DNA of 64,000 nt from Octopus sinensis. Its lineage: Eukaryota. The position numbers and the translations under genes were made by a program. The notes below the pieces were generated by a model. It made no database searches, had not been told where the DNA came from, and saw nothing but the letters and a program-made list of their open reading frames with translations. How positions within the stretch are numbered: position 1 is the stretch's first letter; each line of letters begins with the position of its first letter. Of the stretch, positions 1-63,477 are shown piece by piece. Location: NCBI RefSeq assembly GCF_006345805.1, contig NC_043006.1, forward strand, positions 14,198,001-14,262,000. Direction: 5' to 3'.

Positions 1-404
1 CCAGCTCGCCACCTTAATCTTTCTTAGCTTCATGCGTCTTCTCAAGCACAGCAGATCACCAGAAGTGTCGGTTGTTTGTCATCGCCTTTGTGAGACTCAA
101 CAACTGAGGATCATATTTCACCACCTCATTCCAGATTTTCCTGGGTCTGCCTATTCCACAGGTTCCCACCTCGATTAGAAAGCAGCACTTCATCCTCCAA
201 ATTAGAGTTCAGTACATCTTCCATCAAATTAAGATTTTCAAAGATTTTACAGCAATATAAAGACAAGGAATGATACAAGCAGACTGCTGGCAACCAGATC
301 TTACTTTTTATCTCTCATCAATATGATCGAATATTTGTTCAGTATTCATGTTGATATACAAGTTGTAGTAATCATTACAATATTCTTGTTTATTATAGCA
401 AGGT

Positions 405-14114: not shown

Positions 14115-17100
14115 TCATCATCATCGTTTAGCGTCCGTTTTCCATGCTAGCATGGGTTGGACGGTTCTACTGGGGTCTGTGAAGCCAGAAAGCTTCATCA
14201 GGCCCAGTCAAATCTGGCAGTGTTTCTACGGCTGGATGCCCTTCCTAACGCCAACCACTCCGTGAGTGTAGTGGGTGCTTTTTACGTGCCACCCGCACTG
14301 GTGCCAGACAGAGCTGGCAAACGGCCACGAACGGATGGTGCTTTTTATGTGCCACCGGCACGAGGGCCAGGCGAGGCTGGCAACGGACACGAAACGGGGC
14401 GGTGCTGGCAACGGTCGCGAAACGGAAAGTTCTCTTACATGCCACCGGCACTGGTAACACATCTGCAATTTCCATTGATCGATTTCGATTCTGATCGTCA
14501 CTTGCCTCAACGGGTCTTCACAAGCAGAGTTTTGACATGCCACCGGCACTGGTAGCACATCCGCAATTTCCATTGATCGATTTCGATTCTGATCCTCACT
14601 TGCCTCATCACGTCTTCACAAGTAGAGTTTTGTGTCCCAAGAAGGGAAGGTATGCATACGTAGGCTGGCTCCATCCCATGTAGAAGGCCACGGGTTATGG
14701 ACTCACTTGTCCTGCCGGGTCTTCTCGCGCACAGCACACTTCCAGAGGTCTCGGTCTCTAGTCATTTCCTCAGTGAGACCTAAAGTTCGAAGGTCGTGCT
14801 TCACCACCTCGTCCCAGGTTTTCCTGGGTCTGCCTCTTCCACAGGTTCCCTCAACCGCTAGGGTGTGGCACTTTTTCACACAACTATCTTCATCCATTCT
14901 CGCCACATGACCATACCAGCGCAAACGTCTCTCTTGCACACCACAACTGATGCTTCTTAGGTCCAGCTTTTCTCTCAAGGTACTTACACTCTGCCGAGTG
15001 TGAGTACCGGCATTACACATCCATCGGAGCATACTGGCTTCATTTCTAGCGAGCTTACGCATATCCTCAGCAGTCACGGCCCATGTTTCACTGCCATGTA
15101 GCATGGCTGTTCGTACACACGCATCATACAGTCTGCCTTTCACTCTGTGCGAGAGGCCTTTTGTCACCAGTAGAGGTAAGAGCTCTCTGAACTTTGCCCA
15201 AGCTATTCTTACTCTAGCAGTTACACTTTCAGCACACCCGCCCCCGCTGCTGACTTGGTCACCTAGGTAACGGAAACTATCAACTATTTCTAGTTTTTCT
15301 CCCTGGAAAGTGACGGAAGTTGGTCTCAGAGCATTTTCAGTGTTTATTGTTCCTGAGCATCTGCCACATACAAAAACCATCTTCCTAGTTAGCCTTCCTT
15401 TGACATTGCTGCATCTCTTATGTGTCCATAGCTTACACTTGGTGCATCTTATAGAGTTTCTACCTACACCTTTTCTACAGATCGAGCAGGGCCATCTACC
15501 TGAAGGTGTTTGTGATTTGTCTACCTTCCTACTGATTACGACTTTGGTTTTAGCTAGATTGACTCTGAGGCCCTTCGATTCTAATCCTTGTTTCCACACC
15601 TGAAACTTCTCCTCCAGTTCTGATAGCGACTCAGCAATTAGAGCAAGGTCATCAGCATAGAGGAGCTCCCAAGGGCATCCTGTCTTGAATTCCTCCGTTA
15701 TTGCCTGGAGGACTATGATAAATAGGAGGGGGCTGAGTACTGAGCCTTGGTGGACCCCTACCTCTACCCGGAATTCTTCACTGTACACATTTCCAACCCT
15801 CACCCTACTAGCGGCGTCCCTGTACATGGCCCGCACAGCTCTCACTAACCATTCATCTATCCCTAGTTTCCTCATTGCCCACCAGATAAGGGATCGGGGG
15901 ACCCTGTCGAAGGCTTTCTCCATGTCAACAAAAGCCAGGTACAGGGGCTTATCTTTGGCTAGGTATTTCTCCTGCAGCTGCCTTACCAGGAATATAGCAT
16001 CAGTAGTACTTTTCCCTGGCACAAACCCAAACTGCATCTCATCTAAACTAACTCTCTCTCTAATTAGTTGGGCTATGACCCTCTCCGTAACCTTCATCAC
16101 CTGGTCCAACAGCTTGATACCTCTGTAGTTATTTGTATCTAGGGCATCACCTTTACCTTTGTAGCAGTTGACTATTATACTGCTACACCAGTCATTGGGT
16201 ATGACCCCTTTGTGTATCACCTGATTAACTATACGGGTGACTAGGCTATAGCCGACACTACCAGACATTTTGAGCATCTCTGCAGTGATTCCTGATGGGC
16301 CTGGGGCTTTCCCTGTCTTCATGCTTCTAATTGCCTTAGCTACCACGGAACTATCAACTCGGATAGCTGGTCCCTCTGTTGGGTCAACATTCGGCAGACT
16401 CTCTTTATCCCATTCATTTTCTTCATTCAGCAACCTTTCATAGTGGCATCTCCAAACCTCTCTCTTTGCATCCTCATTTAGCGCAAGTGAACCATCTTCC
16501 ATGCGAACACACTTCTCTCCTACCACATCACGATTCTCTCTCACACACTGTCTTGCAACACGAAACACCTCCAGTCTTTGGTCCTCACGGCGCAGAACAT
16601 TGGCAAATTTTTTCTTATCTGCTTCCCCTCTGGCTAAATAAACCTGTCTCCTAGCTTCTCTTTTGGCAGTCTGATACAATCCCCTGCTACCCCCATTTTT
16701 CCAGACCTTCCAAGCCTGTCTCTTTTCTCTAATAGCCCTGTCTACAATATTGTTCCACCACCACGTTATTCTAGGTCGAGAGGGGACTTTGCACCAGCCA
16801 CAGATCTGGTCAGTGGCTCTCAGCAGGTTGTCCCTTAGAAACGTCCAGCTGTCTTCTACCCCCTGTGATGCTCTATCCCCTTCTACTTCGTCAGAGGCTT
16901 CAAGTAATATGTCCCTAAATCTCTGTCCATTTGCAGGATCTTTAAGCTTCCAGATCCTTCTTCTCCATATTTGTCGTCTTCTGGTTGTCCTCCTAGTCCT
17001 GATCCTAAAGTCACTAACTACCAGTCTATGTTGTGGGGTACATTCTTCACCTGGGAAGGTTTTGGCATTTATAAGCAGCCATCTCTCCCTTTGCCTTGTA

Positions 17101-18160
17101 AGGATGTAGTCAATTTGGCTGGTATGTTGGCCCGATTGGTAAGTGACTAGGTGGCTGGTAGGTTTCCTGAAGTTAGTGTTGCAAATCATAAGATTATTTG
17201 CATCGCAGAACTCCAGCAGCCTGGTTCCCTCCTCGTTGCGGGAGCCATAGCCATAGCCTCCATGTACGCCATGGAAGCCCCCAGCATGTCGTCCAACGTG
17301 ACCATTGAAGTCACCAGCCACAAAGATAAGGTCTCTGTCGTTCGTCAACGAGGTAGTCTGCAGTAGAGTGTCATAGAATCGGTCTTTCTGTCCATCGGGT
17401 AGCCCCGACTGAGGAGCATAGGCTGATATAATGGTTGCTAAACTATGATGAAGCACTAATCTAATCTTAAGTATTCTGTCACATACTCTGATTACCTCAA
17501 TTACTTTATCTACCCATTTCTCAGCGATAAGTATACCCACGCCACCAACCCCGTCAGTGTTCCCTGCCCAGAAAATCTTGTACCTGCGTTCCTTGCCTGT
17601 GAGGAACCTAGCTGATCCTCCTCTCCACCTTATTTCTTGCATGCAACATATATCCACACATCTCCGTTCAAGCATCTCGACTATCTCACCAGACCTACCT
17701 TTCAGAGTGCCAACGTTGAGGGTGCCAACCCTGAGGGTGTGGGAGGCATGGGCTCTAGAGACCCTGGGACGGTGGACAGTAGCTTCGTGTACCTGAAAAG
17801 AAAGCTCGCATTTGGCAGAATTCATGTGCAAGAAATGAAGTAGTAAAGTAGCCTTCAGTACAACCTGCATAACGCTAGCCTTTCATATTTTGCACTGTAT
17901 GAACATTACCTTACATAGGTCGAGACTAGGGGTAGGGAGGGGTAGGGATGGTGAGAACATTTGCAGTCTTCATGGGAAGCAACCCCGGAATGGCAGAGAA
18001 TAGGAACTTCCGGCATGCGTGGTGGGGGTGGGAGGGCGGGTGCACCGTGTCTGAGTAAAGAGGTTCTGTTAATCGTATGAGCTAGCAAATGGGTTTGTAT
18101 GAATCGGGAGACAACACTAAACGAAAAATTGAAAAATCAGAGTGGCTATGAACCTGTAGA
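14115..18160 (-). mobile_element. Near full-length RTE LINE in PHB2 intron 3, same orientation as the gene
   Basis: Intact ORF, about 590-bp 3' UTR ending in a (GAT)n tail at about 14115-14125, and a 98-bp tandem duplication in the UTR (14438/14536). The 5' boundary is uncertain and no TSD was found. Confidence 0.88.
14703..17870 (-). CDS. RTE-clade LINE ORF: APE endonuclease + reverse transcriptase + C4HC3 PHD finger (1055 aa, intact)
   Basis: APE motifs TLNVG, QE, SAYAPQ, GDFNGH, SQIDY and QHRLV. RT motifs QFGF, DMEKAFDRV, GVHQGSVLSPLLF and YADD (15648-15659). RTE C-terminus LHGSETW, RRLRWYGHV and GRGRPRKTW. Confidence 0.96.
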   Translation of the reverse strand: MQVVLKATLLLHFLHMNSAKCELSFQVHEATVHRPRVSRAHASHTLRVGTLNVGTLKGRSGEIVEMLERRCVDICCMQEIRWRGGSARFLTGKERRYKIFWAGNTDGVGGVGILIAEKWVDKVIEVIRVCDRILKIRLVLHHSLATIISAYAPQSGLPDGQKDRFYDTLLQTTSLTNDRDLIFVAGDFNGHVGRHAGGFHGVHGGYGYGSRNEEGTRLLEFCDANNLMICNTNFRKPTSHLVTYQSGQHTSQIDYILTRQRERWLLINAKTFPGEECTPQHRLVVSDFRIRTRRTTRRRQIWRRRIWKLKDPANGQRFRDILLEASDEVEGDRASQGVEDSWTFLRDNLLRATDQICGWCKVPSRPRITWWWNNIVDRAIREKRQAWKVWKNGGSRGLYQTAKREARRQVYLARGEADKKKFANVLRREDQRLEVFRVARQCVRENRDVVGEKCVRMEDGSLALNEDAKREVWRCHYERLLNEENEWDKESLPNVDPTEGPAIRVDSSVVAKAIRSMKTGKAPGPSGITAEMLKMSGSVGYSLVTRIVNQVIHKGVIPNDWCSSIIVNCYKGKGDALDTNNYRGIKLLDQVMKVTERVIAQLIRERVSLDEMQFGFVPGKSTTDAIFLVRQLQEKYLAKDKPLYLAFVDMEKAFDRVPRSLIWWAMRKLGIDEWLVRAVRAMYRDAASRVRVGNVYSEEFRVEVGVHQGSVLSPLLFIIVLQAITEEFKTGCPWELLYADDLALIAESLSELEEKFQVWKQGLESKGLRVNLAKTKVVISRKVDKSQTPSGRWPCSICRKGVGRNSIRCTKCKLWTHKRCSNVKGRLTRKMVFVCGRCSGTINTENALRPTSVTFQGEKLEIVDSFRYLGDQVSSGGGCAESVTARVRIAWAKFRELLPLLVTKGLSHRVKGRLYDACVRTAMLHGSETWAVTAEDMRKLARNEASMLRWMCNAGTHTRQSVSTLREKLDLRSISCGVQERRLRWYGHVARMDEDSCVKKCHTLAVEGTCGRGRPRKTWDEVVKHDLRTLGLTEEMTRDRDLWKCAVREKTRQDK

Positions 18161-32298: not shown

Positions 32299-35032
32299 CT
32301 AGCACTATGACCCGGCGTTGCTGGGTCATAGTGCTAGTGCATGCATATACAGCTGCGTGCGTGCGCACATACACGCAAGTACTGTCCAAATCTCTGACCA
32401 ATCACATACAGCTAGCTGGCATTCAATTGGGCATTTTAATTGGGTTTTGGATAGAAAATTCACAAAAAAGTCACTTCTATTGATTTTTTATTGGCTTTGC
32501 CGGGTGACTGGGGAAATGTAAAGATATGCACGACCAACCTTGGGCGGTTTTGAATGACCATAGAAAGCGCAAGCCCTCTAACTGAAAAATTGTGGATTTG
32601 TATAAAGGACGCGCACGCTCATTTTGCCGTTTATATAGAGAGATTATATTTGACTAGCAGAATTGCCCGGCGTTGCTCGGGGCTGAATTGCTTGAAAGTA
32701 CTGTTAATGATTGCACTGAATTATGATGATTATTCAGGCAAATATTGATAATAAGTTTACGGTGGGAGATAAGGACTTAACGATCAAACGTGTGCCATTG
32801 CATTGTTTTGGGGGAACCAAATTTCTGATGAGCATTATAGGGGCACCAACTTTAAGTTTGAGAAAGTGTGGTGGTAGTCCGGGGTGTTCAAAGGAATTGA
32901 GTACCTCTATTGGATAGTTGATGACGTCCTCTGGGTGAGGAGTTGTATCGATAGACTGATATACATAGACTTCCCCATGAATGAGTTTTAGCATTTCATC
33001 ATTAATATGGTGAACAGTTTTATTCCTCGGGGCCAGTATAGCCTTTTTGCCAATCCAATCCATATTCTGATAATTAGCTTGTAGATCTGGGAACACTGCA
33101 TCTCTGAGATCAGAAGGCGTCTTAACAATGGTACAAATGGAATCGATGGCAATATTACCATTTTCATCCCCTGGTATTTTGCCTTCGCCAAGTGCAAGGA
33201 GGGTGTGAGGAAATGCTGCTGATGTGATATTACGTCGCATATGAGCACGCATATTGGTGTGAAGTTTGAGAGTTACTTCCGTTTATTTAAAGAAATATGC
33301 ATTAAAATGGAAAAAAATTATGGTAAATTATTTGTAAAATCGTAGACTCATCGTAGACGCGCGCTAATACCCAGAAGGGCTCGATATGAATCACGACTAT
33401 AAGATACCCGGTTTTGGTTAAACTGCATCGCAAAATGTGGGAGTAGTTAGGAATCTAAATCGGAGTAGACAGACACACAACCTTTCTTTTATATATAAAT
33501 ATTTTCGTCCTAAAAAACTTTGTATGGATTGAATGGTTACCTGTATGGAAATATATACACGCACATTATACATACATGTGTGTATAGATGAATATATAAA
33601 TACATTTAAATATCTATATACACTTTTGGGCGATCTTTCTGTTTCTTAGAGATAACATTAGATCTTATTTTCGTCCTAAAAAACTTTGTGCGGAGTGAAT
33701 GGTTACCTCTATGGAAATATATACACACACATTATACATACATCTGTGTATAGATGAATATATAAATACATTTAAATATCTATATACACTTTTGGGCGAT
33801 CTTTCTGCTACTTGGATATACTTTAGATCTTATATTCGTCCTAAATAACTTTGTATGGAGTGAAAGGTTACCTCTATGGAAATATATACACACACATTAT
33901 ACATACATCTGTGTATAGATGAATATATAAATACATTTAAATATCTATATACACTTTTGGGCGATCTTTCTGCTACTTGGATATACTTTAGATCTTATAT
34001 TCGTCCTAAAAGACTTTGTATGAATTGAAAAAGAAAATGAAGTGAAATTTTTAAGAAAGGAATTTGTTTACATACATGTGTGAAATGGCAAATGTTTGTG
34101 CAGTTGTCCGAAATGGAACCAGGGTAAATGTGTGGAACTGATGTATTATAATGAATAGTCCTTCTTGTTGTGAATATTAATTTGATTAATATGAACTGAA
34201 AACCAGTGGTGTAGCATATAAGACCATAGGTGATCTAGCAAAAAGGATGACCAGTCTGACTGGTTCATCCCTGTCACACACTCACACACACGCACACACA
34301 CACACACACACTCACACACACGCACACACACATGCACACACACACACTCACACACACGCACACACACACACACACACACGTTAGCTTACAATTTTATTTA
34401 TATATTTGCGTGTCTATGTGTGTAAAGAGGAAGTGGGAGTAATATGCAGAGTGAAAGAGTGAAATGGTAAAATATTTAGTTTTGTCGAATTTTTTCTGAA
34501 ATGGGGGTGAAATTGAAAGAAATTTTGTATGCCATGACCGAATGGAAGTACTTTGAAAAATCATAGGTAAACTCTAATTGAAGAAATTGTGTGAGGAGTA
34601 AATCGTTATGTATTTATTTGTTTCTGTTTGCTATGTTGTTGTTTTTTTTTAGTAGTGGTTTAAGGTACACTTCTCTCGTTTTATATAAATACTTTCACTT
34701 TAATCGTTGCACACTTGCAAAGAGAAAGGAGGAGAAATTAGGGTGATAGCATGAGTGAAGCATTTCGCTCCGTTTGTGTGTGTGTGTGTGTGTGTGTTGT
34801 GTGTGTTTGCTGTAGCCCACACTAAGAAAAGCACTTCACTTACACACCACAATGTGAGTTTTCTCGAAATTTTGCTTAATTGGGGGTGAAATTTTAAAAA
34901 CTGTACCTGGCACGACTCGATGTATTCTACTCTTAAAAATGCTAGGTAAATTGTAATTGAAGAAATCCTATATTGTAGATTTCTATAAGAGACAAAGGGA
35001 GGCAGATAAAATCTGCCTTTTATAATAAGAGA
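32299..35032 (-). mobile_element. Composite non-autonomous Helitron, copy B (inverted relative to A)
   Basis: Same termini (A|TC at 35032, CTAG|T at 32299). ORF 32734-33252 has Pif1 motifs [24 protein letters not shown] and CNGTRLIV. Three 165-bp units plus about 260 bp missing from A. Confidence 0.9.
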
Positions 35033-40926: not shown

Positions 40927-41091
40927 TAAGTTCAATTAGTAAAAGTACAGCCTAGAATGTCATTTATTAACCCTTTCGCAAATGGGAAGACAACTCCAGG
41001 TTTTGTTGTAAGGAAGACGTAGTTATTTCCCCTTTTGGTTAAGAAGGCTTAACCAAAACAACTTTTGCTGTTTTTTTTTTGTAAGTTTTCG

Positions 41092-41784
41092 ATGTTATGT
41101 AACGGACGATCGGGTCCTGTTTATCGCACAAAAATGATCACCAGAGCAATCAAGGATACTTTCTGTGCGAATTTACTCTCTGTATTGAGAAACAATGATC
41201 TATTCGTGTTCAAGCGTTACCGGAGTATGTTCGTTCCAAAAAGCAAGGCCGTGGAAAACCACCACCTCGACATAATCAGGAATTTTCTGCAGAACAACAA
41301 AAGGATCACCGTGTTGACGGGAGCAGGTGTCTCCACCGAAAGTGGAATTCCTGATTACCGATCGGAGGAAGTCGGGATGTACGCACGAAGCAACCATACG
41401 CCTATACGATACCAAGAGTTCCTTAGAAATACCGACCGGCGACAGAGGTATTGGGCAAGGAACTTCGTTGCCTGGCCGCAGTTTTCTTCATTCCAGCCAA
41501 ATACTGTTCATTATGTTCTATCGTCCTGGGAAAAATCTGGCCAGTTACACTGGTTGATCACACAAAATGTCGATGCTTTGCATTCAAAAGCTGGTACTAA
41601 ACGATTGACAGAACTGCACGGTTGTTCCCATCGTGTCGAGTGTTTGTCTTGCCACATGAAGATGCCCCGGACCGAAATGCAGGTACTTTTAACCAACTTG
41701 AACCCTGACTGGCACGCTGAGTCCATTGATATTGCTCCAGATGGAGACGTTCAGCTTGATGATGAACTAGTACAGACTTTCCAG
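41092..41784 (+). CDS. SIRT4: NAD-dependent sirtuin 4 (mitochondrial, class II) exon 1; start could be 41092 or 41134
   Basis: Motifs TGAGVSTESGIPDYRS, RRQRYWARNFVAWPQFSSFQPN (class II), TQNVDALH, ELHG, CLSC zinc pair and APDGDV loop. Arg-rich presequence-like N-terminus. CAG|gtaagt donor. Confidence 0.93.
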
Positions 41785-42304
41785 GTAAGTTTAAGCTAAT
41801 AATAATGCAAATTAAAACAATTCGGTAGATGTTAGATTCCTAAACCGTTTCTGCCCTGCAAAATATTCGAAAACATTGCCTACATTTCTTTTGTTCTGAA
41901 GTTTTATCAAAATGCGAAAAACTTTTGGTGGCGCGAGTTGTGTATATCGAAATATATTTGTTGTTCAGACACACTAGTAATTATTTAATTATGGTCATTA
42001 TCATTAACCACTTTCGTTATATAACCGAAACATTGCACGAACAAATCAATGTTATAAACAATGAGGGAAGGAGTATTCTGTGTGGTTGTTCAATTTGCTA
42101 AACAGTACAGCCAAATCTCCTTCAAATCAAACATCGCAGTCTTAATAGAAGGATACCTTTGTTTGTATTGTCGCTTTTGTTGTTTTTATATGACATAGAG
42201 AAGGAAGGGTAAAGTCCAAGACTTTTTTTATAGGGTTTCCTAAATTAGGATGAAGGAAGCGAGTTGTTTTAGAACTGGAAACGTAACCCGAATGTTTACA
42301 GAGT

Positions 42305-52505: not shown

Positions 52506-52673
52506 CGTTCTTAATTATTTTGAAAATCAATTAAAACAAAAGGATATATTTCAACAAATATAATAACAAAATGTTTAAGGTATTATTGCTTTTAAAAATG
52601 TTGCATGTTCTTTTTGTTGGGTGGGGTTTGTGTTACGTTGTTACCATTCTAAAGTGTTTGTATTTTCTCTTAG

Positions 52674-52820
52674 GTTTATTCTAGCTACAGAATTCTCTTG
52701 GCTGCTCATAAACAGAAAAAACAGATCGGGGCAATAAACATCGGCCCAATACGTGGCGGACATTACCTCGACTTCCACATAAAAGCTAAGTGTGGTGATC
52801 TATTCTTACTTCTTGGATAG
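52674..52820 (+). CDS. SIRT4: SIRT4 exon 3 (VYSSYRILLAAHKQKKQIGAINIGPIRGGHYLDFHIKAKCGDLFLLLG*)
   Basis: VYS.YR, INIGP and CG motifs of the sirtuin C-terminus; ctcttag| acceptor; TAG ends at 52820. Confidence 0.9.
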   Translation, partial: VYSSYRILLAAHKQKKQIGAINIGPIRGGHYLDFHIKAKCGDLFLLLG

Positions 52821-53413
52821 CATTTCAATAATTTAAAGCGGATATTGGTATTTAAGTGACTGATTTTTTTAAATTATGAACTGTATACTTGTATATTTAA
52901 AAATATGTTTTCCCAATTAGTGAAAGTACCTATCCTAACATAATATTATTAATGAAATAATAATAATGTTAATGATGATCATTTAACCAAGAATTCGTCA
53001 TTATATAGAGAGTACATCACAAAATCAGATGTTGGCAGGGTATATATAAAAATATACAGGTGGTAGAGTGTTTAGTGCAAGGAGAAGTTATTTATTAAAA
53101 TTGCCGTGATTGGAATGGAAGTATAGCTTAGAGAAATTCCACCTTTAGCATTTAAACTGGCGATATCTGGCCCAAACATTCTACCTGTTTTATGTTCAAA
53201 CTGGCCAGATCCAGCCCCTCATACTTATGTTACCATGTCATTTTAGAAATAAACATTTACATCATCGAAATCTCGAAGCTACAAGATGATGCAGGATTAA
53301 CTCAAAAGACTGTGAATTAATAAGTGTTACATCAACAGAATAATCTGAATGCTAAAGGGTTGAATACCATATAACAACAGGAAAGGAAAACAGAATGAAA
53401 CTTTACAAATTAA

Positions 53414-54266: not shown

Positions 54267-54812
54267 TTAAAGAGAAATTCTTGTAAAAATCAAATTTGTG
54301 AAAATACAAATGAAATTATTTCATAGTAAGTACCTCGGTAGAATACATATTATATAAATTTGACTCTTTGAAAAGCAGGAATCTATTGTTAACAGCCAGA
54401 AACTGGAAGATTGAATATGAAGAACTTAATAGTTGTAGCTCTGACTAATGATGGCATTTATGGTGCTACAAAGAAATCAAAAAAACAAAAGAAAATGAAC
54501 ATATCTGAAAGGGAATTTATATGTTGGGTATTTGAAGAATTTACTGAAATAGTTGACTGTTTATTAAGTTTTCAAAACAGGTAATGTTCACATATGCATA
54601 TAGACAGAAGTATTGATCTCAGTGTCGCTCAAGCTAAATTCTCAGGAACTATAAAATGGAAGTTGTAATATTCTGTCTCTTATTCTCTGTATCAAAACTA
54701 ATAAATCTAATTTAAATATCCGTGAGTTCTTATATTCTTTGTTATTGGAGTGTTACATGATTAATTCTTCTTTGAAATGATCTGTTAGTTCTAATATATA
54801 TGGAAAGTTGAA

Positions 54813-56282: not shown

Positions 56283-56529
56283 AACATACAAAGTCCCAAT
56301 CAAATTTAATGTAAGTCTTATGGACAATATACGATAAGACAAGTATCTAAAACCCTTCGAAATATTCTGCTGTAACTTGTTACTTCATGTGTATTGGAAT
56401 GTTTCTGTGATGCAGACCACACTTGGAATTTCTTTTGAATAAAGAAAGAATTGAAAATGAATGTGTTGAATTTGTTCGTTGTTTAATCCGTCTTTTCTCG
56501 TGAGATTTGTCCATCACTGTCCTTTTATC

Positions 56530-56740
56530 AACTACCACCACCACCATCACTACCATCAGAGCTATCACTACCACTGCCATTACCATTACCATTACCAACA
56601 ATACCACCATCACAATTATCACCACTTCCACTACCACCTCAACCACTACTTTCACTACCACTACAACTACCACCACCATCACTACTACTACTACTACTAC
56701 CATTACCTCTTTCACCACCACTATCATCACTATTACCTCT
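56530..56740. repeat. Degenerate (ACC/ACT)n trinucleotide repeat
   Basis: Explains the poly-Thr/His/Val ORFs in the track. Confidence 0.9.
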
Positions 56741-56769
56741 GCTGCCGATATTTTGTATGTCTTCAAGGC

Positions 56770-57090
56770 GGTGAGCTGTTTGCTTTGTTTGTTCCTCCTC
56801 GAGCGATGCCTGGCTCATAAGGGCCAGTTTCCCAGTTTCCTTGGCATATAGGTTCCCCACCTGGACAGGACGCCGGTCCATTGCAGGTGAACTGCAAGAT
56901 GCAAGGAGGAAAGAGTGAGTGAAAGTTGTGGCGAAAGAGTCAGCAGAAGTTTGCCATTACCTTCTGCCAGAGCCGCATGGAGCTTAGGTGTTTCACTCAT
57001 AAACATACACATCGCCCGGTCTGAGATTCGAACCCGCGATCCCTAGGCCACGAGACCGCTGCTCTAACCACTAGGCCATGTGCCTCCACA
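56770..57090 (-). mobile_element. SINE family C, tail type 3
   Basis: As above. Confidence 0.8.
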
Positions 57091-60794: not shown

Positions 60795-61179
60795 GATGGA
60801 AGCACTCCGTCGGTTACGATGACGAGGGTTCCAGTTGATCCGATCAACGGAACAGCCTGCTCGTGAAATTAACGTGTATGTGGCTGAGCACTCCACAGGC
60901 ACGTGTACCCTTAACGTAGTTCTCGGGGATATTCAGCGTGACACTGAGAGTGACAAGGCCGGCCCTTTGAAATACAGGTACAACAGAAACAGGAAGTAAG
61001 AGTGAGAGAAAGTTGTGGTGAAAGAGTACAGCAGGGATCACCACCATCCCCTGCCGGAGCCTCGTGGAGCTTTAGGTGTTTTCGCTCAATAAACATTCAC
61101 AACGCCCGGTCTGGGAATCGAAACCGCGATCCTACGACCGCGAGTCCGCTGCCCTAACCACTGGGCCATTGCGCCTCCA
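60795..61179 (-). mobile_element. SINE family C, tail type 4
   Basis: As above. Confidence 0.85.
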
Positions 61180-61243
<64 letters not shown>

Positions 61244-61581
61244 AAACAAGCTTCTTTTAATTTCCATCTACCAAATCCACTCACAGGGCTCTAACCACCC
61301 TGAGACTATTGTAGTAGAAACACTTACCCAAGGTGCCATGAAGTGAGACTGAACCCAGGACGATGTAGTTAAGAACCAAGCTTTTTACCACACAATCACA
61401 CCTGTGACTATATATATTATATTTAGTGAACCTTTAAGTGGCCCATTCTGAATTGCATTTATTTGAATTTTGAGAAAATTTTTTAATTGAAATAAAAAAA
61501 AAGAGTCAAAATCTATTCAGAAATATTTATTATCAGAAAAACCGAAAAACCAAAAAAAAAAACAGAAAGATATGTACAACT

Positions 61582-61995
61582 CTACACATCTGTTATAAGT
61601 ACCTCATTTGTAGAAGGTAAAGATTCATCATTATAAACAGCTGTTGTCAAGGTATGGAAAGCATGGATTGCTACCTGGTTCACACGGTTCTCTCTCTCTG
61701 CTTTACCATTTGGCATATCTCGGAAAAAGTTCTCAATCAAAGCATCTTCAAGTTGATCTTTCCGTTCGGATTTGAGGTATTTGATAATCATGATAATTAT
61801 AGCAGCAGAATAGAACACCAAGACTGCTACTATATATATTAATGCCCCGCTATCAGATGCTGGGCCTGTCCTGTGCACAGTTGGATATTTCCTACTGAAA
61901 TTTTCTGGAGGAAACTGTACTGTTCGGAAAGTCTGATTAGGAAAACCTCTGCACAACAAAGCCAACATACTTGAGGTACTGTTTTGAATAACCAT
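61582..61995 (-). CDS. 137-aa single-pass type III membrane protein, KCNE/MinK-like
   Basis: Intact non-repetitive ORF with no signal peptide. N-glycosylation sequons at N5, N20 and N32. One TM segment (ALIYIVAVLVFYSAAIIIMII, aa 51-71) followed by KYLKSERKD. AAAAAATG start context. KCNE assignment rests on a remembered alignment only. Confidence 0.75.
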   Translation of the reverse strand: MVIQNSTSSMLALLCRGFPNQTFRTVQFPPENFSRKYPTVHRTGPASDSGALIYIVAVLVFYSAAIIIMIIKYLKSERKDQLEDALIENFFRDMPNGKAERENRVNQVAIHAFHTLTTAVYNDESLPSTNEVLITDV

Positions 61996-62020
61996 TTTTT
62001 ATTGATGGTATTGATTGGGG

Positions 62021-62244
62021 AGCTGGCAGAATCGTTAGCACGTTGGGTGAAATGCTTAGTGGTATTTCAGCTGCTGTTACGTTGTGAGTTCAAATTCCGC
62101 CAAGGTCGACTTTGCCTTTCATCCTTTCGGGGTCGATAAATTAAGTACCAGTTACACACTGGGGTCGATGTAATCGACTTAATCCATTTGTCTGTCCTTG
62201 TTTGTCCCCTCTATGTTTAGCCCCTTGTGGGTAATAAAGAAATA
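62021..62244 (+). mobile_element. MetaSINE-like family B just upstream of the KCNE-like ATG
   Basis: 14-bp TSD GGTATTGATTGGGG (62007 and 62245). Confidence 0.88.
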
Positions 62245-63477
62245 GGTATTGATTGGGGATTAAGATGAATATTAAGATGCTAATTATAATGATGGTAACA
62301 TATACTGTTAATCACCGAGGATGTATATTTTCATTTGTGAACTTCATACAAAATTACATTTTGTAAATTGTATTAAATTACACTAAGCTTGAAGCACTGA
62401 TGATTGTTAGGAATGAAAAGCATTTCAGTTCAAGTGATGCCTTGTTGGTTGTAGACGGCCAGTCTCCAAAGTAGAACATATGCAAGTTCTGTTATATCTC
62501 ATAAGTTCTGTCAAAGAGTATTGTTAGAAATCTTTCATATTTATTGTTTGAAAATGGAAAATAAATCCTGCTGAATGAGTGACACCATAACTGCAACCAT
62601 TCTTGTAAACACCTTGAAAATATCCCAATAAAAGTCATTGCTTCAATGTTTTTCTCAAAATTTCTTATCTCAGTGAAAATTCTGTTTACCAAAATAACTT
62701 AGTCTTGTATTTTTTTTTAAATCTTGGTATTGCTGTGGTTTTATTTATTATTGGTTGTTATATTAAAAACCATTTCAGTTCAAAATAAATCTTCCTTGGT
62801 TTGAATATTTAAAACTTTGTTTGGCCAAAATATTCTGAAATAGAAATAAAACAGTAATTAAAAAAAATACAATCATTCAAATTTGATTAAGATTTCAAAA
62901 TCTTTAAGTCTCATTAGAATTGCCAAGAACAGTCTTGAAGTTAATTAGTTTAATAACATGTTTTGTCTTTGGTCAGAAAGTGGTGTTTCTTATTTACTTC
63001 TATCTAGAAATCAAAGAAAATGACTACCATTCCCTTCAAACTTTGCTTTTATGAGTTGGACATCAATGTTTTGAAAGTGACCTATTTTGAAACTGACCTA
63101 TTTTCCATTACATTTCAGATACATTTTACTGAGATGCTGAAGCAGAAATATCATTATAGCAAATATTCTGCTCAGTATCACAGATTTGCTTGTCAGTTGC
63201 TTGACCTTAGCCACTTGAGCATGTCCTTAGTGACTGACAATATGTGCATCTCTGATCATGAGCAGGAGTTGTGAGGGAGCATCATAGCCATGTGTTGAGA
63301 GAGATTCTTTGAAGTTTGAATAAGTGTGACAAAAGCAAAGTTTGAAGGGAATATTGGCCATTTTTCATACTTTCTAAGAGAAAGCAAACAGGAAATAACA
63401 GTCACTACCTGAAGACAAAAATCGTGTTACACTGTGTAATTCTATAGTAATACTTGGTTTCCTAATTTTCAATTAGT

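What the first reader, a model, noticed from the sequence alone, without database searches (positions are those of the whole stretch)
61582..61995. Candidate cephalopod KCNE (MinK/MiRP)-like potassium-channel beta subunit
Seen: an intact, single-exon 137-aa ORF with no signal peptide, sequons at N5, N20 and N32, and one TM helix followed by KYLKSERKDQLED. Against human KCNE1 (recalled from memory) it aligns without gaps: YIVAVLVFYSAAIIIMIIKYLKSERKDQLED vs [35 protein letters not shown], Y, S and the distal D are identical and most other positions are conservative. The N-terminus MVIQNST parallels MILSNTT with the same N5 sequon. Established: KCNEs are roughly 100-170-aa type III single-TM proteins with single-exon ORFs, generally described as vertebrate, with only distant nematode MPS analogues. 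Inference: a molluscan KCNE homologue could modulate cephalopod KCNQ/Kv channels.
Basis: partly seen in the sequence, partly recalled or inferred. Interest (0 to 1): 0.85.

Follow-up and report, generated by a model that had tools for sequence, protein, structure and literature searches.

The report
Octopus KCNE-like single-pass membrane protein gene
A small, strongly conserved octopus gene encodes a one-helix membrane protein from a previously unnamed invertebrate family that is probably a distant relative of KCNE potassium-channel helper subunits, which the literature describes as vertebrate-only.

Summary
The ORF is real: 137 aa, on the MINUS strand at 61582-61995. It is under strong purifying selection (dN/dS 0.07 against Argonauta; 0.02 for the TM plus tail). 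DNA conservation with Argonauta is confined to the ORF.

It belongs to an unnamed family of single-pass membrane proteins, all annotated 'uncharacterized', found in molluscs, annelids, a spider and shrimps. Shared features are a glycosylated N-terminus outside the cell, a conserved TM helix, an acidic juxtamembrane helix, and a class I PDZ-ligand tail (here ITDV).

The window protein itself does not hit Pfam ISK_Channel (KCNE). Even so, ISK_Channel is the commonest Pfam match across the family (67/143), and at least five members pass Pfam's curated cut-off, including a mollusc protein 44% identical to the ORF. A KCNE HMM built here scores the ORF 21.9 bits (0/5000 shuffles reach it; max 12.3). 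hhalign gives 92-95% probability against 0.1-11% for controls. KCNE2 is the top hit among all PDB sequences, though not significantly (E 0.66).

The similarity is short, essentially TM plus juxtamembrane, so homology is probable rather than proven, and channel modulation is untested. Papers from 2024 and 2026 state that no invertebrate kcne genes are known.

The parts
61582..61995 (-). Complete coding sequence, 137 codons plus TAG stop, of the KCNE-like single-pass membrane protein
   Evidence: ORF list. It is identical to the O. vulgaris protein P0144. Orthologues exist. dN/dS is 0.07. DNA conservation with Argonauta is confined to 61553-61998.
61846..61995 (-). N-terminal ectodomain (aa 1-50), with sequons N5, N20 and N32 and a short helix at aa 6-16 (family motif LLxxLxxxC)
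   Evidence: Sequence. AF2 predicts helix 6-16. Sequons are 7 times denser on the N-terminal side than the C-terminal side across the family, and 3 times above shuffled expectation. This is the faster-evolving part (omega 0.24).
61777..61845 (-). Transmembrane helix (aa 51-73, ALIYIVAVLVFYSAAIIIMIIKY), bounded by Y54 and Y73
   Evidence: AF2 helix 47-92 with pLDDT about 90. A51, Y54, I55, L59, F61, Y62 and Y73 are nearly invariant in 143 family members. Y-to-Y spacing of 19 occurs in 130/139 members and in 120/120 KCNEs. This segment carries most of the KCNE score.
61720..61776 (-). Juxtamembrane cytoplasmic helix (aa 74-92, LKSERKDQLEDALIENFFR): basic, then acidic; S76 aligns with KCNE1 S68
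   Evidence: Alignment to the KCNE HMM. The family consensus is YLKxExxExEEE. The AF2 helix continues to residue 92.
61633..61707 (-). Second cytoplasmic helix (aa 97-121), holding the subfamily motif VNxVAIxAFHTLT; KCNEs have no counterpart
   Evidence: Alignment A4: A109, I110, A112, F113 and T117 are invariant, and V105, N106 and H114 nearly so. AF2 helix 97-121. There are no amino-acid changes in aa 49-137 between two Octopus species despite 14 synonymous ones.
61585..61596 (-). C-terminal ITDV, a class I PDZ-ligand-type tail ([ST]-x-[VLIF] at the C-terminus)
   Evidence: 89 of 143 family members end this way, against a 3.4% background for the motif at internal positions. The mollusc subfamily consensus is LLxTDV.
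61526..61531 (-). AATAAA polyadenylation-signal candidate about 50 nt after the stop; a second lies at 61458-61463
   Evidence: Read from the sequence. The first is conserved in the related octopus contig L002. Its function is inferred only.
62007..62258 (.). 224-bp SINE-like insert (62021-62244) flanked by a 14-bp target-site duplication (62007-62020 and 62245-62258), 11 nt upstream of the ATG
   Evidence: Read from the sequence. It is absent from the related species' contig L002, which has one copy of the target. It is present in O. vulgaris.

Best explanation
Window 61582-61995 (minus strand) is a genuine protein-coding gene. Its product is a 137-aa single-pass membrane glycoprotein with no cleaved signal peptide. 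The N-terminus is outside the cell and carries three sequons and a short helix. One TM helix follows, bounded by two tyrosines 19 residues apart. A basic-then-acidic juxtamembrane helix continues from the TM. A second conserved cytoplasmic helix comes next, and the protein ends in ITDV, a class I PDZ-ligand tail.

It is the cephalopod member of a mollusc-wide subfamily. That subfamily sits inside a larger unnamed family found in molluscs, annelids, chelicerates and crustaceans. The family is most likely the protostome counterpart, a remote homologue, of vertebrate KCNE (MinK/MiRP) subunits.

By inference from that homology, the TM helix would lodge against the voltage-sensor and pore domains of a voltage-gated K+ channel (KCNQ/Kv7 or another Kv) and tune its gating or trafficking. 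The tail would tether the complex to a PDZ scaffold of the Dlg/PSD-95 type.

Shown here: the gene is real and constrained; the family exists; the predicted topology; order-specific similarity to KCNE. Inferred: common ancestry with KCNE, channel partnership, PDZ binding.
For: Gene reality:
- Orthologues exist at 96% and 83% identity.
- dN/dS is 0.074 overall and 0.019 for aa 49-137, at dS 1.3.
- DNA conservation with Argonauta is limited to the ORF, plus a syntenic SIR2 exon.

Family:
- 141 representatives at E<1e-3 among 1.84 billion proteins.
- Named members come from Mollusca, Annelida, a spider and shrimps, and all are 'uncharacterized'.
- Subgroups are linked to the octopus-type group at 99.1-99.9% hhalign probability.

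KCNE link:
- ISK_Channel is the top Pfam family, matched by 67/143 members (best E 1.6e-6); the runner-up is matched by 31.
- Five of ten tested members exceed the curated 22.1-bit cut-off. One is P0010 (24.1 bits, 44% identical to the ORF, aligned from residue 2 through the TM). Another is Penaeus P0140.
- A KCNE HMM built from real KCNE1/3/4/5 scores the family at a mean of 19.3 bits and the ORF at 21.9. Reversed sequences score about 0, and the 99th percentile of segment shuffles is 7.
- 0 of 5000 shuffles of the ORF reach 21.9; the maximum is 12.3.
- hhalign gives 92.4% (mollusc group) and 94.6% (the rest) against KCNE. Controls give 0.1-11%.
- All five subgroups (plus an unclassified remainder) match KCNE independently at 85-95%.
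- The rest-of-family HMM scores real KCNE1 and KCNE4 at 18-25 bits.
- KCNE2, which was not used in training, is the top hit of 177,635 PDB sequences.
- KCNE-invariant Y/Y(+19)/S(+22) correspond to Y54/Y73/S76.

Topology: sequon enrichment and flank charges; AF2 helices.
Against: - The window protein has no Pfam ISK_Channel hit even at E<=10 and no KCNE hit among PDB sequences.
- The mollusc profile scores real KCNEs at only 7-14 bits.
- The KCNE2 PDB hit has E=0.66, which is not significant on its own.
- The similarity spans about 36-80 columns and is essentially TM plus juxtamembrane. In that kind of region convergence and inflated HH probabilities are known risks.
- A bacterial TM family (CrgA) also gives weak hits in 31 members.
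- The KCNE DP[FY]xxY motif is absent from the ORF. The subgroup that carries a literal DPFN does not hit ISK_Channel.
- Foldseek found nothing.
- No transcript, interaction or electrophysiology data were available.
Confidence: 0.55

Rival explanations
1. The gene encodes a conserved single-pass, PDZ-anchored membrane protein from an independent protostome family. Its resemblance to KCNE is convergent: a similar TM helix bounded by tyrosines and followed by basic residues. It would work as an adaptor, trafficking factor or accessory subunit for some other membrane protein (a receptor, transporter or non-Kv channel), or as a scaffold-bound signalling stub.
For: The KCNE similarity is short and TM-centred: 19.9 of 21.9 bits come from aa 45-95. 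The window protein fails Pfam ISK_Channel. The mollusc profile scores KCNEs at only 7-14 bits. The most constrained part of the protein, the VNxVAIxAFHTLT helix and TDV tail, has no KCNE counterpart. Weak CrgA hits show that TM composition alone produces some signal.
Against: Reversed and block-shuffled controls remove the signal, so it is order-specific. Among 24,736 Pfam families, including many single-pass ones, ISK_Channel is clearly the commonest hit and several members pass its curated cut-off. KCNE2 ranks first among all PDB sequences. The overall architecture matches KCNE: an N-proximal sequon, an ectodomain helix, Y-x18-Y TM boundaries, size, and an intron-less CDS.
Confidence: 0.33
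2. It is a true KCNE-superfamily member, but its partner is not KCNQ/Kv7. The Shaker-like xTDV tail would instead place it in Dlg/PSD-95 clusters with Kv1/Shaker or other synaptic channels. It would act mainly on localisation and surface expression, not on gating.
For: Class I PDZ-type tails occur in 89/143 members. The mollusc consensus LL[VE]TDV resembles the Kv1/Shaker C-terminal PDZ ligands (own knowledge, not tested). Vertebrate KCNEs are known to be promiscuous among Kv families (stated in PMC11659587).
Against: No data on partners at all. The tail motif is only four residues long.
Confidence: 0.1
3. The ORF is a chance open frame or a pseudogene in repeat-rich non-coding DNA, not a functional gene.
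For: The region is full of SINEs, LINEs and microsatellites. A SINE sits 11 nt upstream of the ATG. The deposited O. vulgaris model is a truncated 69-aa product.
Against: dN/dS is 0.07 at dS 1.3. There are 14 synonymous and 0 non-synonymous changes in aa 49-137 between two Octopus species. The ORF keeps the same 137-aa length in Argonauta. Homologues occur across several phyla.
Confidence: 0.01

Closest known systems
Vertebrate KCNE family (KCNE1/MinK, KCNE2-5/MiRPs, KCNE6, lamprey KCNE0; Pfam PF02060 ISK_Channel)
   Same: About 100-170 aa with an intron-less coding sequence. No signal peptide, with the N-terminus outside the cell. A sequon at about residue 5, followed by a short ectodomain helix. 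One TM helix bounded by tyrosines 19 residues apart. Y-[IL]-[KR]-S plus basic residues at the cytoplasmic boundary (Y54/Y73/S76 correspond to KCNE1 Y46/Y65/S68). Order-specific profile similarity.
   Different: The window protein itself is below Pfam's threshold. It lacks the DP[FY]xxY[IV] juxtamembrane motif of KCNE1-3. Its juxtamembrane segment is strongly acidic (ExxExEEE). It has a conserved second cytoplasmic helix (VNxVAIxAFHTLT) and a TDV PDZ-type tail with no conserved KCNE counterpart. The named members are all protostomes; most members are unnamed and of unknown taxon. Function is untested.
Caenorhabditis elegans MPS-1 to MPS-4 (MiRP/KCNE-like single-pass subunits)
   Same: They are invertebrate single-pass proteins described as KCNE-like accessory subunits of Kv channels (as cited in PMC13516689).
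   Different: That paper describes them as nematode-specific. No MPS sequence was compared here, so their relationship to this family is unknown.
C-terminal PDZ ligands of Shaker/Kv1 channels (xTDV), which bind Dlg/PSD-95
   Same: The same kind of four-residue class I tail (T-D-V at the extreme C-terminus).
   Different: This is a motif-level resemblance only, recalled from general knowledge. It is not a homology claim and was not tested.

Membership tests
KCNE (Pfam PF02060 ISK_Channel) | The protein itself scores above Pfam's curated gathering threshold (22.1 bits) for ISK_Channel | tested here: not met
   No ISK_Channel hit for the window protein at E<=10 (repeated). Relatives do pass: P0010 (44% identical) 24.1, P0135 28.3, P0140 25.2, P0098 24.4 and P0094 22.2 bits.
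KCNE (Pfam PF02060 ISK_Channel) | Profile-level sequence similarity to KCNE beyond composition and topology controls | tested here: met
   The KCNE HMM built here gives 21.9 bits, against a maximum of 12.3 in 5000 segment shuffles. hhalign gives 92.4% and 94.6%, against 0.1-11% in controls. ISK_Channel is the commonest Pfam hit, in 67/143 members. Caveat: the signal is short and TM-centred.
KCNE (Pfam PF02060 ISK_Channel) | Single TM helix, N-terminus outside and C-terminus inside, no cleaved signal peptide, N-glycosylated short ectodomain | tested here: met
   By prediction only. One long helix at 47-92. Sequons at 4.0 per 100 aa on the N side against 0.58 on the C side. Acidic N flank and basic C flank. 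The sequon at N5 lies ahead of the only N-terminal hydrophobic stretch.
KCNE (Pfam PF02060 ISK_Channel) | KCNE-invariant residues: Tyr at the outer TM boundary, Tyr at +19, Ser at +22 | tested here: met
   Y54, Y73 and S76 in the window protein. Y/Y/S is found in 120/120 KCNEs, and Y/Y in 130/139 family members. Position +22 is S in only 14 members, and otherwise mainly R, T or K.
KCNE (Pfam PF02060 ISK_Channel) | Cytoplasmic juxtamembrane DP[FY]xxY[IV] motif (KCNE1-3) | tested here: not met
   The window protein has EDALIENFF at that place. Some other subgroups have YDNYFMEYVKRD-like or DPFN-like versions. KCNE4 and KCNE5 also lack the canonical motif.
KCNE (Pfam PF02060 ISK_Channel) | Small size with the coding sequence in one exon | tested here: met
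   A 137-aa uninterrupted ORF in the window and in Argonauta.
KCNE (Pfam PF02060 ISK_Channel) | Assembles with KCNQ1/Kv channels and changes their gating | not testable with these tools
   This needs co-expression electrophysiology or a multimer structure prediction; neither is available here.
Unnamed protostome single-pass family, mollusc TDV-tailed subfamily (defined here) | Core DxGA(V/L)xYIVAVLVFYSxxIxxMIIKYLKxE(K/R) TM, an acidic juxtamembrane segment, the VNxVAIxAFHTLT helix, and an LxTDV tail | tested here: met
   All are present in the window protein. Alignment A4 has 15 invariant and 9 nearly invariant columns. Profile hits reach E 1e-18 to 1e-53 in gastropods, bivalves and cephalopods.
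C. elegans MPS (MiRP-related) proteins | Sequence relationship to MPS-1..4 | not tested

The most novel reading that the evidence does not exclude
KCNE-type accessory subunits are not a vertebrate invention. A bilaterian-ancestral single-pass subunit gave rise to vertebrate KCNEs and also to a diversified protostome family with at least five subgroups, most carrying PDZ-ligand tails. The octopus gene would be a PDZ-anchored Kv-channel beta subunit, and molluscs, annelids and arthropods would hold a whole unstudied layer of K+-channel regulation.
Probability: 0.4. Interest if true: 0.8.

Novelty: new variant of a known kind. Interest (0 to 1): 0.66.

Why it matters
[quoted passage not shown] If this family is truly KCNE-related, the origin of KCNE-type regulation moves back to the protostome-deuterostome ancestor.

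It would also supply concrete candidate accessory subunits for Kv channels in cephalopods, Aplysia/Lymnaea-type model molluscs, annelids and crustaceans. Native K+ currents in these animals often differ from those of the cloned alpha subunits.

Finally, it would link such subunits to PDZ scaffolds. The question is directly testable with standard oocyte co-expression. Even if the KCNE link fails, this is a deeply conserved, very strongly constrained and completely uncharacterised membrane-protein family.

Tried and rejected
- Direct Pfam and PDB-sequence searches with the window protein gave no KCNE hit.
- The mollusc profile against PDB sequences gave no KCNE at E<=10.
- Foldseek of the AF2 model against the PDB gave 0 matches, as expected for isolated helices.
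- I suspected that the family members carrying a literal DPFN(V)Y motif would be the bridge to KCNE. They give no ISK_Channel hit at E<=0.01, and the motif lies about 13 residues further from the TM than in KCNE1. I dropped it as evidence.
- CrgA (31 members, best E 5e-4) was treated as a TM-composition artefact, since it is a bacterial two-TM protein.
- Transcript evidence was not obtained. The Logan contigs L002 and L003 are collinear and unspliced and have no poly(A) tail, so they cannot be told apart from genomic DNA.
- ARAGORN found no tRNA gene near the ORF.
- A Gumbel fit to the shuffle scores fitted poorly (P about 1.5e-3). I report the empirical 0/5000 instead.
- The taxonomy of most ENA/Logan-only family members could not be resolved, so presence or absence in non-vertebrate deuterostomes and cnidarians is unknown.

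Full report

Yes. The ORF runs ATG to TAG at 61582-61995 and encodes 137 aa, but on the minus strand. The plus strand of the same interval is full of stops.

**2. Is it a gene?**

- A search of 5.8 billion proteins found orthologues at 96% (another octopus, Logan contig L002) and 83% (Argonauta hians) identity, both exactly 137 aa.
- The protein is identical to one encoded in the O. vulgaris chromosome assembly (P0144) and differs at 3 residues from O. bimaculoides A0A0L8HI49.
- The window DNA is about 97% identical to the O. vulgaris record OX597822.1, and the ORF differs by 2 synonymous substitutions. The window therefore comes from a very close relative or another haplotype. O. sinensis is my inference.
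- Against Argonauta, nucleotide similarity is confined to 61553-61998, apart from repeats and a syntenic sirtuin exon.
- Nei-Gojobori dN/dS is 0.074 overall (dS 1.33). It is 0.24 for aa 1-48 and 0.019 for aa 49-137. Between the two Octopus species, aa 49-137 carry 14 synonymous and 0 non-synonymous changes.

This is a protein-coding gene under strong constraint. The constraint is strongest on the TM helix and the cytoplasmic part.

**3. What family does it belong to?**

An exhaustive HMMER search of 1.84 billion cluster representatives with the three octopod sequences found 141 proteins at E<1e-3, 37 of them below 1e-10.

All share a core of the type (D/N)-x-(G/D)-A-(V/L)-(M/L)-Y-I-V-(A/V)-V-L-x-F-Y-S-x-G-I-x-x-x-I-I-x-Y-L-K-x-E-x-x-E-x-E-E. 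In that core, A51, Y54, I55, L59, F61, Y62, Y73 and E77 (window numbering) are at least 90% conserved over 143 sequences.

Sources name members from these taxa, and every name is 'uncharacterized' or 'hypothetical':
- gastropods: Arion, Lottia, Elysia, Physella, Biomphalaria, Bulinus, Candidula, Batillaria;
- bivalves: Mya, Mercenaria, Mytilus;
- annelids: Ridgeia, Owenia;
- a spider: Uloborus;
- shrimps: Penaeus.

The window protein belongs to a mollusc-wide subgroup. This subgroup has a second conserved cytoplasmic motif, VNxVAIxAFHTLT, and the tail LLxTDV (alignment A4; profile search). I sorted the rest into four further subgroups by their post-TM motifs. All four are related to the octopus-type group at 99.1-99.9% hhalign probability (P 1e-19 to 1e-31).

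**4. Anatomy and topology**

AlphaFold2 with the mollusc alignment (mean pLDDT 68) predicts the following:
- a short helix at aa 6-16;
- a disordered linker;
- a long, confident helix at aa 47-92 (TM plus juxtamembrane, pLDDT about 90);
- a helix at aa 97-121;
- a disordered tail.

Across the family, N-x-[ST] sequons occur at 4.0 per 100 aa before the TM and 0.58 per 100 aa after it: 314 observed on the N side against 101 +/- 9 in composition-preserving shuffles. The 12 residues before the TM have a mean net charge of -1.7. The 9 residues after it hold 3.4 Lys+Arg on average. This supports an N-out, C-in glycoprotein.

89 of 143 members end in [ST]-x-[VLIF], a class I PDZ-ligand pattern, against 3.4% for the same pattern at internal positions. 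In the window protein the tail is I-T-D-V.

**5. The KCNE question**

*Evidence against, or weak:*
- The window protein gives no Pfam ISK_Channel hit at E<=10.
- Neither it nor the mollusc profile recovers a KCNE chain from PDB sequences.
- The mollusc HMM scores real KCNEs at only 7-14 bits.
- Foldseek finds nothing.

*Evidence for:*

(i) I scanned all 143 sequences against the 24,736 Pfam families. ISK_Channel is matched by 67 (best E 1.6e-6). The runner-up, the bacterial CrgA, is matched by 31, and no other family by more than 6.

(ii) Five of ten members examined exceed Pfam's curated 22.1-bit cut-off. One is P0010, a TDV-type mollusc protein 44% identical to the window ORF; it aligns from residue 2 to the end of the TM (24.1 bits). 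Another is Penaeus P0140 at 25.2 bits.

(iii) I retrieved 120 real KCNE1/3/4/5 proteins and built an HMM from 23 non-redundant ones.
- It scores the family at a mean of 19.3 bits (max 32.7) and the window ORF at 21.9.
- Reversed sequences average 0.2 bits (max 9.5).
- Shuffles that keep the N-flank, TM and C-flank separate have a 99th percentile of 7.0.
- None of 5000 such shuffles of the ORF exceeded 12.3.

(iv) hhalign of the mollusc alignment against a balanced KCNE1/3/4/5 alignment gives 92.4% probability (P 5e-7) over 80 columns, from the N-proximal sequon to the juxtamembrane segment. Reversed or block-shuffled KCNE profiles give 0.1-11%. The 88 non-TDV members give 94.6%. Each of the five subgroups, and the unclassified remainder, gives 85-95%, with reversed controls at 0.2-4.7%.

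(v) In the reverse direction, an HMM of the non-TDV members scores real KCNE1 at 18.6 bits (max 24.9), KCNE4 at 21.5, KCNE3 at 14.9 and KCNE5 at 11.2. Reversed sequences score about -1.

(vi) With that superfamily profile, the top hit among 177,635 distinct PDB sequences is human KCNE2 (2m0q). This paralogue was not used in training, and the alignment is in register through the TM to DPYHQYI. Its E-value of 0.66 is not significant on its own.

(viii) The three residues invariant in all 120 KCNEs examined are Tyr, Tyr at +19 and Ser at +22. They correspond to Y54, Y73 and S76. The Y-x18-Y spacing holds in 130/139 family members.

*Caveats:*
- 19.9 of the ORF's 21.9 bits come from aa 45-95, so the evidence is essentially one TM helix plus its boundary.
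- HH probabilities are not calibrated for such segments.
- The KCNE1-3 DP[FY]xxY motif is missing from the ORF.
- The literal DPFN motif in one subgroup is out of register and does not help.

I conclude that remote homology with KCNE is probable, roughly two in three, but not proven. The octopus subgroup is a derived branch of a family whose other branches look more KCNE-like.

**6. Mechanism**

*Shown:* a constrained, single-pass, N-out glycoprotein architecture with two conserved cytoplasmic helices and a PDZ-type tail.

*Inferred from KCNE biology:* the TM helix packs against a Kv channel's voltage-sensor and pore interface and alters gating or surface expression.

*Inferred from the tail:* attachment to a Dlg/PSD-95-type scaffold. 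The resemblance of LL[VE]TDV to Shaker/Kv1 tails is from my own knowledge and was not tested.

The main rival is an unrelated PDZ-anchored adaptor family with a convergently KCNE-like TM helix.

**7. Novelty**

[quoted passage not shown] Two further full-text searches found no paper linking KCNE to molluscs or annelids.

Automatic Pfam annotation may already flag the few members that pass the cut-off, but all names seen here are 'uncharacterized'. I rate this a new variant of a known kind. It is a protostome family probably related to KCNE, with its own cytoplasmic module.

**8. Local context**

A 224-bp SINE-like element with a 14-bp target-site duplication sits 11 nt upstream of the ATG. It is shared with O. 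vulgaris but absent from the species of L002.

The deposited O. vulgaris model CAI9728398.1 (69 aa) starts inside the TM helix. It splices from a GT at codon 131/132 to an exon about 7 kb downstream, replacing VLITDV with HLKCHH. Conservation across molluscs argues that the 137-aa TDV-ending product is the functional one.

A sirtuin gene lies tail-to-tail downstream. That synteny is kept in Argonauta.

Noticed in passing
window 62007-62258: A 224-bp SINE-like element (62021-62244) with a perfect 14-bp target-site duplication is inserted 11 nt upstream of the ORF's ATG. It is present in O. vulgaris too, but absent from the related octopus contig L002, which has a single copy of the target. It must lie in the 5' UTR or core promoter of a strongly constrained gene.
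   Followed up: partly
window 61600-61605 (GAG|GT at codons 131/132) and about 54445-54465 (minus strand); L004 17374-17394: The deposited O. vulgaris gene model (CAI9728398.1, 69 aa) starts at M69 inside the TM helix. It splices from codon 131 to a distant exon encoding HLKCHH*, which removes the conserved VLITDV tail. In the window that exon reads HHKCHH*. This is either a mis-annotation or a real alternative 3' end that would delete the PDZ ligand.
   Followed up: partly
window 14703-17870 (minus strand); L004 7130-11308: An intact 1055-aa LINE ORF with endonuclease, reverse-transcriptase and PHD-like domains. A 98%-identical copy sits in O. vulgaris between the KCNE-like ORF and the sirtuin gene, at a place where the window has none. 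This suggests a young, recently active element that differs in location between close relatives.
   Followed up: partly
window 41065-41799 (+) and 52663-52834: Exons of a Sir2-family (sirtuin) gene, convergent with the KCNE-like gene. The neighbourhood is conserved in Argonauta hians and O. vulgaris.
   Followed up: partly
window 32734-33252 (minus strand): A 172-aa ORF with a Pif1 helicase 2B domain. It is probably a fragment of a Helitron-like or Pif1-like mobile element.
   Followed up: no
window 61080-61245: A tRNA-like SINE head next to a long (CA)n/(TA)n microsatellite, about 350 nt downstream of the ORF's stop. ARAGORN calls no tRNA there.
   Followed up: no
window 56380-56851: Overlapping ORFs of 113-128 aa on both strands, made of Val-, His/Tyr- or Thr-rich low-complexity repeats. 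This looks like a coding-like artefact of a tandem repeat and not a gene.
   Followed up: no
family members P0022-P0033 (e.g. Batillaria P0025): Some members of the TDV subgroup carry 200-400 extra, poorly conserved, Ser/Arg-rich residues between the conserved cytoplasmic helix and the LLVSDV tail; the one named member is a caenogastropod (Batillaria). The N-terminal module and the extreme tail are kept while the spacer varies greatly.
   Followed up: no
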